In this document: in pieces, positions 8,206-50,365 of the stretch
Layout of the letters: each line of letters begins with the position of its first letter
Position numbering within the stretch: position 1 is the first letter of the stretch
Source of the DNA: Octopus sinensis
Lineage: Eukaryota
Reading direction: 5' to 3'
NCBI RefSeq assembly: GCF_006345805.1
Contig: NC_043006.1
Span: 70,556,001-70,620,000, forward strand
Length of the DNA stretch: 64,000 nt
Translations under genes and position numbers: made by a program
Notes under the pieces: generated by a model
What the model was told of the DNA's origin: nothing
The model's input: only the letters and a program-made list of their open reading frames with translations
The model's database searches: none

Positions 8206-8758
8206 TACATACACACACACACATATATGGTAAATAAAAGATGGAAGATGGAATGTACAAGAATTTATTATTAATCTTGACACTTGTTTTGACACATCTA
8301 GCATTGATCCTCATGGGTGGGACACTCAACAACTGGTTCAGGAGTGTCCAGTGTGGAAGCAATGTGAAATAAAGTGTTTTGCTCAAGAAAACAACACGCC
8401 GCCCAGTCATGGAATTGAACCCATGCTCAAGCGATCATGGAGTGCAAGAGCCTAACTACTAGATCATGTGCTTTCACATATGTGTGCGTGTGTGTGTGAA
8501 TTTGGAGGGATATATTATCTAGATGGATACTATGGTGGCTCTCAGTTAAGCTCTAGGTTATGGCTAACTACATCAATCAATATTTAACGTCTGTGACTAC
8601 TATTAGTTGTCAGTTACTCTGTAAATTCCTCGATGGTAATTCCACCTTTGCTTCACTTGATGGTAATATTGTCTGGGGTATATATTAGCAATAATTATAA
8701 CAATATAGAACATGGAGATGTGCAAGTCTCTATGTTCTATACCATTATTGTTATTACT

Positions 8759-8807
<49 letters not shown>

Positions 8808-8816
8808 GTATATATA

Positions 8817-10076
8817 TTGGGTCATCCCATAAATAATGTGGTTTTTTATACTTATTTTATTTTTCAAAACTAAGATAAGCAAAGTTCTTTTTTAATCTAA
8901 AATATACTCTCTTTCATTTTCTACAATGCTCTTCCATCTATCTGGTAGACTTGCAAGGTCCCTCTTTCAAGATTCACTTGTCCATGATAAAAAATACTCC
9001 TCCAGTACTGATTTGACCTCACCTACAGAATTCATATTTTTCCATACAAATGATTTTGAAGACTGTGGAATAAATGATAATCAGATGGGGCAATGTCTAG
9101 CGAATATGATGGTTGGGGCATCGTTTCCCATTCGAACTGCTCCGGCCTTTGGAATGTAATCTCACTATATGTGGCTGAGCAATTATCCTGATGGTGAAAC
9201 CCCGTTTTTCTTCAAACCAAAGAAGGTTGTTTTTCTTCTAGCACTCACTTAAGCTGCTCAAACTGCTTCAGTAGATCTCCTTGTTATCATTTGGTTTGGG
9301 TTTAAAAGATCAAATTGGACTAAATCTTTCATATCCCACTAAACAGATAACAACACCTTCTTTAACCAGAGTTGTTGGTATTTCTCTTTTCCCTATTTAC
9401 TGTCTTCTGCGCTTGACATTTTTATAGAGAATCCATTTCTCATCACCAGTCACTATTCGGTCCAAAAAAGGTTCATTTGTGAGGTGTGACAACAAAGAAG
9501 AGCACACATTCACTTTCTGTGCACAATTAGACTTGAAATGTTTGTGAGGAACCCAGTGACCCAATTTGCTGCCTTTTCTGATGGCACAAGGTGTCGATGA
9601 ATGGTTGAATGACCAAATCCAAGCTTCTCTACTAGTTCCTCAAGTTATGATGAGATTTTGTTCCACCAGGTTTTTCAGGATATCCTCATTGAGCTCTATA
9701 GATCTTCCAGGATGAGGCTCATCTTTTAGGCTGTAGTTTCTAGCTCGAGATTTCTGGAACCACCATTGACTCTGGCTTATGCTTATTGTCCGATCCCCAT
9801 ATACTGCATTAATATTCCTTGTACTTTCCGTTGCATTGTTGCCTTTATTGAACTTACAAAGCAAAATATACCAAATGTGTTCCTTTGTCTCTTCCATTAT
9901 AGTTTTGAAAATTAACTGTTAAAATCGAACTGCACTCTTCAAAACTTGTACTAAGAATAAGGTAAAATTACTACCTGCTTTTATAGAAAGTTGATGCAGG
10001 TAGTTTATCCCAGCCACCTCAGACTTTTACTGCATGCAACTGAAAAAAAAAATGCATTATTTATGGGATGACCCAA
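8817..10076 (-). mobile_element. Decayed mariner (DD34D) transposon, copy 1
   Basis: TIR TTGGGTCATCCCATAAATAATG at both ends, TA flanks, minus-strand ORF MEETKEHIWYILL..., multiple stops and frameshifts. Confidence 0.95.
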
Positions 10077-10141
10077 TATATATAAGAAATAATAATAATA
10101 TAGAATATGGAGACTTGCTCATCTCCATGTTCTATAGTGTG

Positions 10142-10207
<66 letters not shown>

Positions 10208-10216
10208 GTATATATA

Positions 10217-11482
10217 TTGGGTCATCCCATAAATAATGTGGTTTTTTATACTTATTTTATTTTTCAAAACTAAGATAAGCAAAGTTCTTTTTTAATCTAA
10301 AATATACTCTCTTTCATTTTCTACAATGCTCTTCCATCTATCTGGTAGACTTGCAAGGTCCCTCTTTCAAGATTCACTTGTCCATGATAAAAAATACTCC
10401 TCCAGTACTGATTTGACCTCACCTACAGAATTCATATTTTTCCATACAAATGATTTTGAAGACTGTGGAATAAATGATAATCAGATGGGGCAATGTCTAG
10501 CGAATATGATGGTTGGGGCATCGTTTCCCATTCGAACTGCTCCGGCCTTTGGAATGTAATCCTCACTATATGTGGCTGAGCAATTATCCTGATGGTGAAA
10601 CCCCGTTTTTCTTCAAACCAAAGAAGGTTGTTTTTCTTCTAGCACTCACTTAAGCTGCTCAAACTGCTTCAGTAGATCTCCTTTGTTATCATTTGGTTTG
10701 GGTTTAAAAGATCAAATTGGACTAAATCTTTCATATCCCACTAAACAGATAACAACACCTTCTTTAACCAGAGTTGTTGGTATTTCTCTTTTCCCTATTT
10801 ACTGTCTTCTGCGCTTGACATTTTTATAGAGAATCCATTTCTCATCACCAGTCACTATTCGGTCCAAAAAAGGTTCATTTGTGAGGTGTGACAACAAAGA
10901 AGAGCACACATTCACTTTCTGTGCACAATTAGACTTGAAATGTTTGTGAGGAACCCAGTGACCCAATTTGCTGCCTTTTCTGATGGCACACAGGTGTCGA
11001 TGAATGGTTGAATGACCAAATCCAAGCTTCTCTACTAGTTCCTCAACAGTTATGATGAGATTTTGTTCCACCAGGTTTTTCAGGATATCCTCATTGAGCT
11101 CTATAGATCTTCCAGGATGAGGCTCATCTTTTAGGCTGTAGTTTCTAGCTCGAGATTTCTGGAACCACCATTGACTCTGGCTTATGCTTATTGTCCGATC
11201 CCCATATACTGCATTAATATTCCTTGTACTTTCCGTTGCATTGTTGCCTTTATTGAACTTACAAAGCAAAATATACCAAATGTGTTCCTTTGTCTCTTCC
11301 ATTATAGTTTTGAAAAATTAACTGTTAAAATCGAACTGCACTCTTCAAAACTTGTACTAAGAATAAGGTAAAATTACTACCTGCTTTTATAGAAAGTTGA
11401 TGCAGGTAGTTTATCCCAGCCACCTCAGACTTTTACTTCATGCAACTGAAAAAAAAAATGCATTATTTATGGGATGACCCAA
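10217..11482 (-). mobile_element. Decayed mariner (DD34D) transposon, copy 2
   Basis: Same TIRs; ORF 10799-11302 with WVPH and TGDEKW motifs; downstream HQDN...YSLDIAPSD with 34-residue D-D spacing after correcting one frameshift. Confidence 0.95.
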
Positions 11483-11552
11483 TATATATAAGAAATAATA
11501 ATAATAATATAGAATATGGAGACTTGCTCATCTCCATGTTCTATAGTGTGAT

Positions 11553-47812: not shown

Positions 47813-48604
47813 TATATATATATATATGTATGTATGTATGTATGTATTCGTGATATATATATATATATATCACGAATGCTACTTGCATTTGACTCACACA
47901 CACACATCCTTGTAGTAAAAAAGGAAATCTGTCAGCAAGGCTACTGGTCAAGTGGTCACACGTATTTATACATACACAGACATAGTCACACACATACATA
48001 TATACTTGCACACATATACAGATATGTGTGATAAGTTAAACTATATCAAGGAGGTCATTCCTTAAGTGATCAAGCCATATATATATATATTATATATATA
48101 TATAAATGCTTACACACACATATACAGAACAATACTTGCATAGTTGAAATGAAGGACAATGACATCACCTCCCCTAACTACACTAACCTCAGAGTGGTGA
48201 CAGTGAGGGTGATGGTGGCAGTGCTAGTGCTGGTGGTGGTGGCAGCGGTGGAGACAGTGGTAATAATGATGATGGTCATAGACGGACCAGAGGTGGGGGC
48301 ACTCTAAGATTGTTTAAGAATTGAACAACGCAAGAGTTAGTAGCCTTCTATATCAATGTCTGTCACTCTTTCTGTGTAATTCAGTGAGGCATAAGAGCCA
48401 CTACACAATTACAGCAATATTTCTCCTCACTGTATGACTGGTTCTAATGAAGGTTTTTCCTGTTATCTGGGGTGAGTTTTTTATCTAGTAGCAATGTGTG
48501 TATGCTTATTTATGAGTATTGTAGATATAGTTGGTGTATTATAGGTTTATATGTGTGTATGTATTTTACGTTGGGCAGTTTATATAATATTGTTTTCATA
48601 TATG

Positions 48605-48905
48605 TATGTATCGTGGCACCGAGGGGCCCAGTTGATCTGATGAACAGAACAGCCTGCTCGTGAAATTAACGTGCACTCCACAGACACATGTACCCATAAC
48701 ATAGTTCTTGGAGAGATTCAGAGTGTGACAAGGCTGGCCCTTTGAAATACAGGTACAACAGAAACAGGAAGAAAAAGTGAGCCAGAGCCTCGTGGAGCTT
48801 TAGGTGTTTTCACTAAATAAACACTCACAACGCCTGGTCTGGGAATCAAAACCACGATCCTACGACCACGTGTGCTGCCCTGACCACTAGGCCATTGCGC
48901 CTCCA
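48605..48905 (-). mobile_element. SINE family D variant
   Basis: Match to 26398-26720. Confidence 0.75.
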
Positions 48906-48919
48906 CTATATGTGTGTAT

Positions 48920-49500
48920 ATCTTTTACTTATTTCAATCATCAGACTGTAAGCTTTTTCTCTTTTTTCTTTCTTTCTTTGTTTTGGTCTAGTATTTATTT
49001 CGTTGGTCTCTTTTGCTGAACTGCTAAGCTACAAAGACCTAAACAAACCAACACCGGTTGTCAGGTGGGGAAGAAGAGAACACAGAGATGCACATGTACA
49101 TATGCAATAGGGCTTCTACACAGTTTCTGTCTACCAGATTCACCTACAAAGCTTTAGATAGCTTGGGGATCTAGTAGAAGACACTTGCCCAAGGTGCTGC
49201 GTAGTGGGACCAAATCCACACACGCGTGTGATGTGTGTGTGGGGGGGGGGTGCACGCGTGTAGTGTGCATGTGTATATGTGTGTGCATGCATGAATGTGT
49301 GGTGTGTGTGTGTTTGTGTGTTCTCCACCCCACTTAATAATCGATGTTGGTTTGTTTATATCCTTGTGACTAAGGAGTTCAGTGAAAGAGACTGATAGGA
49401 TAAATGATATAGACTTAATAGAACATAAGTACTCAGGTCGATTTGTTTGACTAAAACTCTTCAAGGAGATGCTGCAGCATGGCCCACAGTCAGTGACTGA
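48920..49500. mobile_element. Two SINE family A copies in opposite orientation
   Basis: Minus copy ~48920-49215, plus 3' half ~49300-49500. Confidence 0.7.
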
Positions 49501-50029
49501 GTGGAAGGTAAATGGTAATAGTAAGATGAAATAAAGTACCAGTTATGTATTCGGGGTTTATATGATTGACAGCTCTTTTAAACTGTATTTGTTTAGACTC
49601 TGTACATTCTGAGTTCAAATCCTACCAAGGATAGCTTTGCTTTTCATCTCTTCAGGTCAACAAAGAACCAGTTAAGTACCAGAGTAGATGGCTTCGGCTA
49701 ACCCCTCCTCTCAAAATTGTTAGCCATGCACCTAAATTAGAAACATTTATTAGAATTATTTTTTGATATATTGGGATGATAATGAACTTGTTATTAAAAA
49801 TTCATTAAAATAAAACTGACATACTGTATTTTTTGGTATACAAGCCAACATAGTATATAGTGTCAACATGTAGTGTAAACACTCAGAAATCATAACTGTC
49901 TTTCTAAATCCTACTGCATTTCACATGGAATTTTTAGTCCGCCAAAATGACTTTAGCATATGAGTCAACCTATGGTTTTTGGTCATAAATTTTGGTGTGA
50001 AGAATTCAACTTGTATATCAGAAAATATG

Positions 50030-50071
<42 letters not shown>

Positions 50072-50073
<2 letters not shown>

Positions 50074-50365
50074 CTTCTTTGGGGATTTGGTTTGCAAGAT
50101 TCTTTATGTGAGTTTGTGTGTTGAAGCATATTTTGTTGTGTCTAGGAAGAGTCATTCTCTTTTAGTGCCTTATTAGTTAACACACTCACTGGTTAAGTTT
50201 CCACTCATTTATTTATTTATTTTTCCTAAAATTTTCAATAGTCTGAAAAGGTTGCAAGATACAACGAAAATTTTAGGAAAAATAAATAAGTAAATGAGTG
50301 GAAACTTTACTGGTGAGCGTGATAAATAATAAGGCACTAAAAGCGAATAACACAACAATATATAA
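50072..50365. mobile_element. Fold-back element family F2
   Basis: Inverted arms meeting at the hammerhead-like motif TGAAAAGGTTGCAAGATACAACGAAAATTTTAG (50244-50276); (TA)n on both sides. Confidence 0.7.

What the first reader, a model, noticed from the sequence alone, without database searches (positions are those of the whole stretch)
8690..50365. Several unrelated families of (TA)n-anchored, fold-back, hammerhead-bearing mini-elements
Seen: at least four sequence-unrelated short elements (F1 at 11597, 32935, 47510; F2 at 15079, 28523, 47697, 50072; the pair at 20230-20420 and 45540-45720; the 46325-47013 element) share an architecture. They have no ORF, a 3' end fused to (TA)n, frequent inverted duplication of part of the element, and in most copies a type I hammerhead motif with a self-complementary stem III (ACCGGGT, AATT, ACGT, ACGTACGT). 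Established: Penelope-like elements (PLEs) carry hammerheads in their pseudo-LTRs, often with tiny palindromic stem III that cleaves as dimers, and form inverted pLTR structures. Inference: these are non-autonomous PLE or retrozyme-like parasites targeting TA microsatellites, and would be misread as TIR MITEs. I do not know whether these particular families have been described.
Basis: partly seen in the sequence, partly recalled or inferred. Interest (0 to 1): 0.85.

Follow-up and report, generated by a model that had tools for sequence, protein, structure and literature searches.

The report
TA-microsatellite mini-retroelements, few hammerheads
This stretch of an animal (cephalopod-like) genome holds several families of short, gene-less mobile elements that sit in (TA)n microsatellites and often carry a folded-back duplicate of themselves; only two of the lineages carry a hammerhead-ribozyme-like motif, so they look like ordinary relatives or hitch-hikers of Penelope-like retroelements, not a new kind of element.

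Summary
The architecture is real. All 11 conserved 3' termini abut (TA)n, and 19 of 22 ends lie within 12 nt of a TA run (background 4.8%). Four loci are palindromes that run to their centre.

For F1, F2 and E there are single-arm, 5'-truncated copies ending at the same 3' terminus. This favours replicative, retro-type insertion over cut-and-paste MITEs.

The hammerhead claim holds only in part:
- A canonical-core type I motif occurs at one locus, in both arms of the 11848-12325 fold-back (0.04 expected per window).
- The P pair carries a Penelope-type minimal hammerhead, but each copy is mutated at an invariant core base.
- F2, E and the truncated F1 copies have none.
- Rfam hammerhead models hit nothing.
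- No RT or GIY-YIG remnant and no tandem units are in the window.

Published work already describes (TA)n-biased Penelope-like elements (Naiad, Neptune), which also occur in Octopus, with inverted insertions and minimal hammerheads.

Verdict: Penelope-type insertions or dependants, probably new members of a known kind. Retrozyme membership is not supported. The partner element could not be tested because the source genome was unreachable.

The parts
11598..11847 (-). F1 copy a: core plus a 3' module of about 105 nt. Its 3' terminus ...TTATTTAAATTT abuts (AT)21 at 11555-11597.
11848..12325 (-). Fold-back joined directly to the 5' side of F1a. Arms are 11848-12014 and 12159-12325 (91% complementary). 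It is palindromic to its centre near 12086. The outer end has no TA array.
11867..11939 (-). Type I hammerhead-like motif with an exact core: 7-bp helix I, CUGAUGA, 41-nt helix II closed by A10.1-U11.1, GAAA, near-palindromic ACCGGGU, cleavage triplet GUA.
   Evidence: no Rfam hit
12234..12306 (+). The same motif in the inverted arm. All six internal differences lie in distal helix II. The outermost helix I pair is A-U instead of G-U.
32937..33008 (-). F1 copy b, inverted arm. It duplicates the 5' end of the direct copy, with a 20-nt deletion. Its outer end ...CATCCCTCT abuts a TA-rich array.
33009..33202 (+). F1 copy b, direct and 5'-truncated. Its 3' terminus ...TTCTAAATG abuts (TA)35.
47508..47662 (-). 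F1 copy c (subfamily). It lacks the 105-nt 3' module and ends ...GTCCTCTAAATTTAGT next to (AT)n. TA arrays flank both sides.
15079..15276 (+). F2 copy a: 5' leader shortened by about 25 nt, hairpin with an internal deletion, 3' end ...CAGACACAACAG then (TA)n.
28523..28808 (-). F2 copy b, full length: leader of about 65 nt, then a hairpin of about 230 nt. TA arrays flank both sides.
50071..50362 (+). F2 copy d, full length. TA arrays flank both sides.
47697..47812 (-). F2 copy c: 5'-truncated, one arm plus part of the loop, same 3' terminus as the other copies. It shares the TA array 47663-47698 with F1c.
20234..20420 (-). P copy 1. Its 3' end ...AAATTCTAAC abuts the TA array 20217-20233. The 5' boundary is uncertain.
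20330..20365 (-). P1 minimal-hammerhead relic: CUUU-CUAUCGA-A-GAGCgaagGCUU-GAAA-CG-UU-AAAG. The first core box has two changes (G5A, A6U). The predicted cleavage site lies 100 nt from the 3' end.
45540..45715 (+). P copy 2. TA arrays flank both sides. Its 3' end is ...GGATTAAC.
45594..45628 (+). P2 minimal-hammerhead relic: GUUU-CUGACGA-A-GAGCuccGCUC-AAAA-CG-UU-AAAC. G12 is changed to A. The predicted cleavage site lies 91 nt from the 3' end.
46325..46723 (-). E, direct copy. The 3' module of 107 nt (46325-46431) lies outside the palindrome. The 3' end ...CGGATAAC abuts (TA)n at 46185-46324.
46724..47014 (+). E, inverted arm, 97.8% identical to 46432-46722. Its outer end ...ATTGCTTAG abuts (TA)n at 47012-47158. 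A 46-nt direct duplication lies near the centre.
20017..20216 (+). TA arrays flank both sides. It lies tail-to-tail with P1 in one TA array.

Best explanation
These are insertions of short, non-coding retroelements that integrate into (TA)n microsatellites by target-primed reverse transcription. Most likely they are made by, or derived from, Penelope-like elements (PLEs).

SHOWN
- Each family has a fixed 3' terminus flush with (TA)n and variable 5' ends.
- Most copies have TA arrays on both sides, and different families share single arrays. (TA)n is therefore the target and not just a templated tail.
- Two lineages carry a sense-strand type I hammerhead upstream of that 3' end. These are F1a with its fold-back, and P. 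The P motif has the published PLE minimal-hammerhead signature. Both P copies are now mutated at invariant core bases, so they are dead relics.

INFERRED
- The enzyme is a (TA)n-biased PLE of the Neptune, Naiad or Penelope type. Naiads lack canonical hammerheads, which would fit F2 and E.
- Some 'families' (F1, E, P) may simply be 5'-truncated ends of longer PLEs. F2 has the same 5' leader in three copies and looks like a dedicated non-autonomous unit of about 290 nt.
- The palindromes arise at insertion. The nascent cDNA folds back, or the polymerase switches to the cDNA as template, at the 5' end of the copy. The inverted arm is then joined to the upstream TA array, possibly through TA microhomology.

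The hammerhead would process precursor RNA in active master copies. Nothing in this window shows that any copy is active.
For: - TA anchoring: 11 of 11 3' ends and 19 of 22 ends against 4.8% background. E2/P1 and F1c/F2c each share one array.
- 5'-truncated single-arm copies share the 3' terminus.
- The palindromes run to their centres, with no or a tiny loop in E, F1b and 11848-12325. This fits snap-back better than two independent primings.
- Hammerhead with an exact core at 11867-11939 and 12234-12306: 2 hits against 0.04 expected, and 0 of 100 shuffles reach helix I>=7 with helix II>=5.
- P motif under a PLE-specific descriptor (bulge after A9, G10.1, palindromic 15.2-16.2): 1 hit with at most 1 core mismatch and 2 hits with at most 2. 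Expected 0 and 0.005 in 200 shuffles.
- Helix I of P shows one compensatory change: GUUU/AAAC against CUUU/AAAG.
- The hammerhead block is the best-conserved part of P.
- Both hammerheads are in sense orientation relative to the TA-abutting 3' end.
- The cleavage site lies 91 and 100 nt from the 3' end in P. In the Anolis PLE the cut site is at +26 of the ORF and reverse transcription starts at +111-118, a distance of 85-92 nt (PMC11167929).
- Literature: PLE (TA)n bias, inverted/tandem insertions, Naiads in Octopus spp. (PMC8557442); min-HHR features and opposite-strand pairs 100-700 bp apart (PMC4209133); PLE expansion in Octopus vulgaris (PMC13282606).
Against: - No Rfam hammerhead hit at any threshold tried.
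- The canonical-core motif has A10.1-U11.1 instead of the conserved G-C, and an unusually long helix II.
- Both P copies are mutated at invariant core bases.
- F2 and E have no hammerhead.
- No RT or GIY-YIG remnant in 64 kb.
- There are no pLTR-type direct repeats, and the 65-250 nt asymmetry exceeds the published 30-40 bp 'tail'.
- The inverted arm lacks the 3' end, unlike the typical PLE inverted copy.
- Other retroposons here are microsatellite-anchored too: SINE_C in (ATT)n, and SINE_A followed by (TA)n(TG)n. A LINE partner is therefore a live alternative.
- Copy numbers are 2-4 per family, so structural covariation cannot be tested properly. The P descriptor was tuned after seeing the sequences.
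Confidence: 0.58

Rival explanations
1. SINE-like passengers of a microsatellite-specific LINE rather than of a PLE. A LINE whose endonuclease cuts (TA)n, by analogy with Dong at (TAA)n, mobilises RNAs through their 3' ends. The hammerhead-like motifs would be incidental or inherited from unrelated sequence.
For: SINE_C copies are flanked on both sides by (ATT)n, and SINE_A is always followed by (TA)n(TG)n. Microsatellite-anchored retroposition is therefore general in this genome. Dong-R4 is the most abundant recently active LINE group reported in Octopus vulgaris (PMC13282606). Fixed 3' ends with 5' truncation fit LINE-mediated insertion equally well. No PLE protein remnant is present.
Against: Two independent hammerhead-type motifs sit in TA-anchored elements, in sense orientation, where about 0.04 is expected by chance. 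Among autonomous retrotransposons, hammerheads are a PLE hallmark (PMC4209133). I know of no LINE specific for (TA)n (own knowledge, not tested). Palindromic 5' duplications are not typical of SINEs.
Confidence: 0.2
2. Cut-and-paste DNA elements: Stowaway-like Tc1/mariner MITEs or fold-back transposons. They would have long terminal inverted repeats and TA target-site duplications, and land in (TA)n because every dinucleotide there is a target.
For: Mos1-type mariner copies with TA-flanked TIRs lie in the same TA arrays (8817-10086 and 10215-11485). The palindromic parts of F2, E and F1b are flanked by TA or TA-like dinucleotides. Long hairpins are typical of MITEs, and Rfam plant-miRNA models hit them.
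Against: - The mobile units are asymmetric: 65-250 nt lie outside one arm, and the true ends have no TIR.
- F1a, F1c, P1, P2, E2 and F2c have no inverted repeat at all, yet keep the family's 3' terminus.
- E2 is continuous across E's arm junction.
- The termini do not match the resident mariner TIR.
- F2 arms co-vary between copies at 10 of 79 pairs. Transposase-binding TIRs would not be expected to do this.
Confidence: 0.07
3. The palindromes are not part of the insertion mechanism. They are secondary rearrangements at fragile (TA)n tracts, such as hairpin-capped breaks or fork template switching, or they are assembly artefacts. The repeats would be ordinary decayed retroposon fragments.
For: Long AT-rich tracts are known to be prone to cruciform formation and palindrome formation (own knowledge). 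Two recent 1.4-kb tandem duplications bounded by (TA)n in this window show that these arrays rearrange.
Against: Four different families show the same polarity: the inverted arm always lies at the 5' side and the 3' module is always excluded. The arms have diverged by 2-17%, so they are not assembly chimeras. The F2 hairpin is inherited by three dispersed copies.
Confidence: 0.1

Closest known systems
Penelope-like elements with microsatellite bias (Naiad, Neptune; also Penelope/Poseidon) - Craig et al. 2021 (PMC8557442); Cervera & de la Pena 2014 (PMC4209133)
   Same: (TA)n as preferred target. Complex inverted insertions that create TIR-like structures. An asymmetric extension at one end. 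Minimal type I hammerheads with a bulged base after A9, G10.1-C11.1 and a palindromic helix III (P family). Hammerhead pairs on opposite strands a few hundred bp apart (11848-12325). Naiads lack canonical hammerheads, as F2 and E do, and occur in Octopus spp.
   Different: No RT or GIY-YIG ORF and no pLTR direct repeats. The inverted arm lacks the 3' end instead of being a 5'-truncated copy with its 3' end outward. The asymmetry is 65-250 nt, not 30-40 bp. The canonical-core motif has A10.1-U11.1 and a 41-nt helix II.
Animal non-LTR retrozymes (Cervera & de la Pena 2020, PMC7229834; Li et al. 2026 preprint, 10.64898/2026.07.22.740005)
   Same: Short, AT-rich, ORF-less elements with type I hammerheads that are proposed to be non-autonomous derivatives of PLE pLTRs.
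   Different: Retrozymes are head-to-tail tandem repeats of about 170-400 nt, each with a hammerhead, which release circular RNAs. No tandem units occur here, and most copies have no hammerhead.
Microsatellite-specific LINEs and their SINEs, e.g. Dong at (TAA)n (own knowledge; Dong-R4 abundance in octopus from PMC13282606)
   Same: Site-specific retroposition into a simple repeat, fixed 3' ends and 5' truncation. In the same window SINE_C sits in (ATT)n.
   Different: No LINE specific for (TA)n is known to me. LINE/SINE systems carry HDV-like ribozymes, if any, and not hammerheads. Fold-back 5' duplications are not typical.
Stowaway-type MITEs of Tc1/mariner
   Same: Small, AT-rich, hairpin-forming and TA-flanked. 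Automated MITE finders would call F2, E and F1b.
   Different: The asymmetric units lack terminal inverted repeats at their true ends. Single-arm truncated copies exist. The termini do not match the resident mariner.

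Membership tests
Hammerhead ribozyme, type I (Rfam RF00163 and clan) | Score at or above the curated threshold of an Rfam hammerhead covariance model | tested here: not met
   No hammerhead family at gathering score. None among the 150 best of 199 matches at E<=10 over the window, and none at E<=10 in sub-windows covering four of the six element loci, including every locus with a claimed motif. 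No positive control with a known PLE min-HHR could be run.
Hammerhead ribozyme, type I | Invariant core CUGANGA ... GAAA ... UH, with helices I and II in type I order | tested here: met
   Met only at 11867-11939 (-) and 12234-12306 (+): 7-bp helix I, 5-bp closing helix II, GUA site; 0.04 hits expected per window. 10.1-11.1 is A-U, not G-C.
PLE minimal hammerhead (Cervera & de la Pena 2014) | Intact core plus a bulged base between A9 and 10.1, G10.1-C11.1, palindromic 15.2-16.2 and a short helix I | tested here: inconclusive
   P2 and P1 have the bulge, G10.1 and palindromic ACGU. Such a motif is not expected by chance (0 and 0.005 in 200 shuffles). The core is broken in both: G12A in P2, G5A and A6U in P1. 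F2, E, F1b and F1c have no motif.
Self-cleaving ribozyme (function) | Site-specific self-cleavage as monomer or dimer | not testable with these tools
   Needs in vitro transcription and cleavage assays, or RNA 5'-end mapping.
Penelope-like element (autonomous) | ORF with PLE-type reverse transcriptase and GIY-YIG endonuclease | tested here: not met
   Pfam scan of all 290 stop-to-stop ORF fragments of 55 aa or more that passed a low-complexity filter: no RVT or GIY-YIG.
Penelope-like element | pLTRs, i.e. direct partial-tandem repeats flanking the unit | tested here: not met
   No same-strand adjacent copies of any family.
Penelope-like element | Inverted 5'-truncated copy adjacent to the 5' end, with 3' ends outward | tested here: inconclusive
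   Inverted copies are present in four loci, but the inverted arm lacks the 3' terminal 65-250 nt. For F1 the outer end of the inverted arm coincides with the 3' end of F1c. This allows an 'alternative 3' terminus' reading.
PLE-dependent non-autonomous element | 3' end shared with an autonomous PLE of the same genome | not testable with these tools
   The source genome is not in the reachable collections. The supplementary consensuses of PMC8557442 are not held.
Naiad/Neptune-type targeting | Insertion bias for (TA)n microsatellites | tested here: met
   19 of 22 ends and 11 of 11 3' ends lie next to TA runs, against 4.8% background.
Animal non-LTR retrozyme | Head-to-tail tandem monomers, each with a type I hammerhead | tested here: not met
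   No tandem arrays of these families. The two intact-core motifs are on opposite strands.
Tc1/mariner MITE | Terminal inverted repeats at both true ends, matching a transposase-encoding relative, with a TA duplication | tested here: not met
   The units are asymmetric, and single-arm copies keep the 3' terminus. The termini are unlike the resident mariner TIR TTGGGTCATCCCATAAATAATG. The TA duplication cannot be scored inside (TA)n.

The most novel reading that the evidence does not exclude
Several unrelated ORF-less RNAs may form a guild that parasitises one (TA)n-specific Penelope-type machinery. On this reading they are routinely laid down as snap-back palindromes: retrotransposition that manufactures MITE-like fold-backs, whose arms then co-vary (F2: 10 of 79 pairs). 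That would be a class of 'PLE-SINEs' distinct from tandem retrozymes. It would also mean that part of the 'MITE' annotation in cephalopod and other invertebrate genomes is really class I.
Probability: 0.2. Interest if true: 0.6.

Novelty: new member of a known kind. Interest (0 to 1): 0.33.

Why it matters
If the Penelope link holds, these families are a compact example of how (TA)n-targeting retroelements seed and fragment microsatellites. They also show how such elements build hairpin-forming repeats that automated pipelines would file as TIR/MITE DNA transposons. This bears on repeat annotation in cephalopod genomes, which are very repeat-rich. The fold-back polarity, with the inverted arm always 5' and the 3' module always excluded, is a usable clue to the still poorly understood PLE integration mechanism. 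It does not open a new category. (TA)n bias, inverted insertions and minimal hammerheads in PLE remnants are all published.

Tried and rejected
- Rfam scans at gathering score and at E<=10, over the whole window and three sub-windows: no hammerhead. The long hairpins only attract plant miRNA models well below threshold.
- The CUGAUGA...GAAA match at 48637 lies on the antisense strand of a tRNA-derived SINE and is not conserved in the copy at 55660. Rejected.
- UUGAGAA in F1 (33012-33057) has no GAAA box. In E, GAAACGUACGUC has no first box. The CCGAUGA/CUGGUGA variants in F2 are not conserved. Rejected.
- A covariance model built from P1 and P2 finds no further copy in the window.
- The clustering of differences between the two hammerhead arms in distal helix II looked like selection. 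The arms belong to one dead locus and several changes are CpG decay, so it is not used as evidence.
- F1/E 3'-module homology: Smith-Waterman p=0.002, but the reciprocal nhmmer search is not significant. Downgraded to 'suggestive'.
- Reaching the source genome failed. The exact ORF look-up found nothing. Mariner homologues are at most 73% identical, and the contig fetched shares no repeats with the window. Two viral-contig scans and two metagenome scans gave nothing usable.
- Helitron and Helentron were considered: there are no TC...CTRR termini and no 3' GC hairpin. Rejected by inspection.
- The GGGATGACC shared by F1 and the mariner TIR is in the opposite orientation relative to the element end. 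Treated as coincidence.

Full report
CONTEXT
The window is eukaryotic: 31-43% G+C in 2-kb windows, 129 tandem-repeat rows, and dense tRNA-derived SINEs. The SINE sequences resemble those I know from octopus genomes (own knowledge). The organism is not given. It could not be identified with the tools.

THE FAMILIES
Self-BLAST and alignments confirm the repeated families.
- F1 lies at 11598-11850 (sense -), 33004-33202 (+) and 47508-47662 (-).
- F2 lies at 15079-15276 (+), 28523-28808 (-), 50071-50362 (+) and 47697-47812 (-).
- E lies at 46325-47014.
- The 'pair' 20230-20420 / 45540-45720 (P1, P2) gives no BLAST hit. MAFFT shows a conserved block of about 60 nt in an otherwise poorly alignable, T-rich background.
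- None of the elements has coding capacity. A Pfam scan of every stop-to-stop fragment of 55 aa or more in the window that passed a low-complexity filter found no reverse transcriptase and no GIY-YIG. It found only Mos1/Tc1-type transposase pieces from mariner copies.

TA ANCHORING
(TA)>=4 runs cover 2.6% of the window, and 4.8% of positions lie within 12 nt of one. All 11 conserved 3' termini and 19 of 22 element ends are that close. The formal P values (1e-15, 1e-22) are inflated, because the boundaries were partly read off the arrays. The effect is still not in doubt.

Most copies have TA arrays on both sides. Different families also share one array: E2 and P1 lie tail-to-tail at 20217-20233, and F1c and F2c share 47663-47698. 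The repeat is therefore a target and not merely a templated tail. About half of the TA arrays of 25 nt or more in the window abut one of these elements.

FOLD-BACKS AND POLARITY
Four loci are palindromes:
- 11848-12325, with arms 91% complementary;
- 32937-33100;
- E, with arms 46432-46722 and 46724-47014 at 97.8%;
- the hairpin that is an inherited part of F2.

In the three single-locus palindromes (11848-12325, F1b and E) the inverted arm lies on the 5' side of the direct copy. Pairing runs to the centre with little or no loop. The 3'-terminal part of the direct copy lies outside the palindrome: 107 nt in E, about 105-130 nt in F1b and about 250 nt in F1a. F2 is arranged differently: its hairpin ends at the 3' terminus, and it is a 5' leader of about 65 nt that lies outside the palindrome.

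Single-orientation, 5'-truncated copies with the same 3' terminus exist for F1 (F1c), F2 (F2c) and E (E2). E2 is continuous across the junction between E's 3' module and its arm. The palindromes are therefore secondary duplications of a linear element, not the TIRs of a DNA transposon. The outer end of the F1b inverted arm coincides with the 3' end of F1c (...CATCCCTCY). This suggests an alternative 3' terminus or a preferred joining site at an internal TA run.

Between F2 copies, 10 of 79 hairpin pairs carry changes on both sides that keep the pair. With three sequences this cannot separate three possibilities: selection on the hairpin, gene conversion, or regeneration of the hairpin.

HAMMERHEADS
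I scanned the window with a descriptor requiring:
- an exact core (CUGANGA or UUGANAA ... GAAA);
- helix II of at least 4 bp;
- 0-10 nt of helix III, then U and a non-G base;
- helix I of at least 4 bp.

It finds two sites, 11867-11939 (-) and 12234-12306 (+), the two arms of one fold-back. Dinucleotide shuffles give 0.04 hits per window, and none with helix I>=7 and helix II>=5. The motif has a 7-bp helix I, near-palindromic ACCGGGU for helix III and a GUA site. It also has A10.1-U11.1 and a 41-nt helix II. The minimum-free-energy fold contains helices I and II.

The P block reads (G/C)UUU-CU(GA/AU)CGA-A-GAGC-loop-GCU(C/U)-(A/G)AAA-CG-UU-AAA(C/G). It shows the features that Cervera and de la Pena list as emerging independently of their search descriptor: a base between A9 and 10.1, G10.1 pairing, and palindromic 15.2-16.2 (PMC4209133). 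It also has one compensatory change in helix I. However, P2 has G12A, and P1 has two changes in the first box. Neither copy should cleave.

A descriptor built on those published features finds P2 with at most 1 core mismatch, and P1 as well with at most 2. Expected counts are 0 and 0.005 in 200 shuffles. The descriptor was written after seeing the sequences. A covariance model from P1 and P2 finds no further copy.

F2, E, F1b and F1c have no credible motif even with two core mismatches allowed. Rfam returns no hammerhead family at gathering score. None appears among the 150 best of 199 matches at E<=10 over the window, nor at E<=10 in small sub-windows. I could not run a positive control with published PLE min-HHRs, so the weight of this negative result is uncertain.

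Both hammerhead types lie on the strand whose 3' end is the TA-abutting terminus. In P the predicted cleavage site is 91 and 100 nt from that end. This is close to the 85-92 nt between the hammerhead cut site and the reverse-transcription start sites in the Anolis PLE studied in vitro (PMC11167929). It is a single, cross-clade comparison.

WHAT IT MOST LIKELY IS
The elements are retro-type insertions into (TA)n, made by or derived from Penelope-like elements. Published PLEs of the Naiad and Neptune clades prefer (TA)n and form tandem and inverted insertions with an extension at one end. Apart from the Naiads they carry hammerheads in their pLTRs. Naiads lack canonical hammerheads and are present in Octopus spp. 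(PMC8557442). Min-HHRs are mostly found as single dispersed motifs attributed to truncated PLEs, sometimes as opposite-strand pairs 100-700 bp apart (PMC4209133). Octopus vulgaris has many Penelope families (PMC13282606).

F2 keeps the same 5' leader in three copies and looks like a dedicated unit of about 290 nt. F1, E and P may be 5'-truncated ends of longer elements.

For the fold-backs I favour snap-back or template switching of the nascent cDNA at the 5' end of the copy, followed by joining to the upstream TA array. This step is an inference. It fits the centre-complete palindromes better than two independent primings would. It differs from the arrangement usually drawn for PLEs.

RIVALS
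- A (TA)n-specific LINE with SINE-like passengers is the main alternative. In this same window SINE_C copies sit in (ATT)n and SINE_A is followed by (TA)n(TG)n. Microsatellite-anchored retroposition is therefore general here and not diagnostic of PLEs. Only the hammerheads and the fold-backs argue for PLEs.
- The MITE reading is disfavoured by the asymmetric units and the single-arm copies.
- Secondary rearrangement at fragile TA tracts is disfavoured by the constant polarity across families.

COMPARISON AND NOVELTY
The elements work like PLE remnants or dependants. Membership as autonomous PLEs or as retrozymes fails on tested defining features: no ORF, no pLTRs and no tandem hammerhead units. 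The kind is known. The particular families may be undescribed, but I could not check Repbase or Dfam, or the source genome. Interest is moderate to low.

Noticed in passing
8705-11560: Tandem duplication with a period of about 1400 bp and 97.9% identity. The unit is a Mos1-type mariner (8817-10086 and 10215-11485, TIR TTGGGTCATCCCATAAATAATG, HTH_48 hit) plus about 130 bp of flank and a (TA)n array. The series ends at the (AT)n that abuts the 3' end of F1a.
   Followed up: partly
15276-18201: Second recent tandem duplication (period about 1460 bp, 99.4% identity), bounded by three (TA)n arrays at 15276, 16718 and 18183. The first array abuts the 3' end of F2a. Unequal exchange between TA arrays, or an assembly problem, is possible. 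The link to the neighbouring mini-element is unexplained.
   Followed up: partly
10100-10146 (also 8700-8760 and 11495-11554): A perfect hairpin of about 40 nt, ctatagaacatggaga...tctccatgttctatag, lies directly upstream of the (TA)n in each duplication unit. It may be another tiny TA-anchored fold-back.
   Followed up: no
e.g. 42986-43215, 58017-58243, 25637-25861, 39274-39408: SINE_C family (about 225 nt, about 30 copies or fragments) is flanked on both sides by (ATT)n. This suggests retroposition targeted to (TAA)n, as known for Dong-type LINEs.
   Followed up: partly
e.g. 28100-28492, 51423-50991, 1756-2110: Composite SINE: a tRNA-like module A (about 150 nt), then an internal (TA)n(TG)n microsatellite, then module B (about 200 nt). 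About 20 copies. A partial tRNA-model hit at 2801-2856 belongs to a SINE head.
   Followed up: partly
48637-48665 and 55655-55700: A CUGAUGA...GAAA string lies on the antisense strand of a tRNA-derived SINE tail. It is not conserved in the second copy, so it is a false hammerhead lead. One copy of that SINE (55622-55945) ends in (TATC)n(TA)n.
   Followed up: yes
46658-46756: Near the centre of the E palindrome there is an extra direct 46-nt duplication (A-c-A-c-A', where c is the 12-nt palindrome tatcttaagata). This is consistent with slippage or template switching at the turn-around point.
   Followed up: no
11598-11725, 33085-33202, 46325-46450, 20095-20216: The 3' modules of about 105 nt in F1 and E share a position-matched motif (AAATTAAT...TTTCACC...ATTATT). 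Smith-Waterman gives p=0.002, but nhmmer cross-detection is not significant. This may be a shared 3' recognition module.
   Followed up: yes
26822-27211: A 67/134-nt tandem array (5.8 copies, 72-74% matches) unrelated to the finding. Not examined.
   Followed up: no
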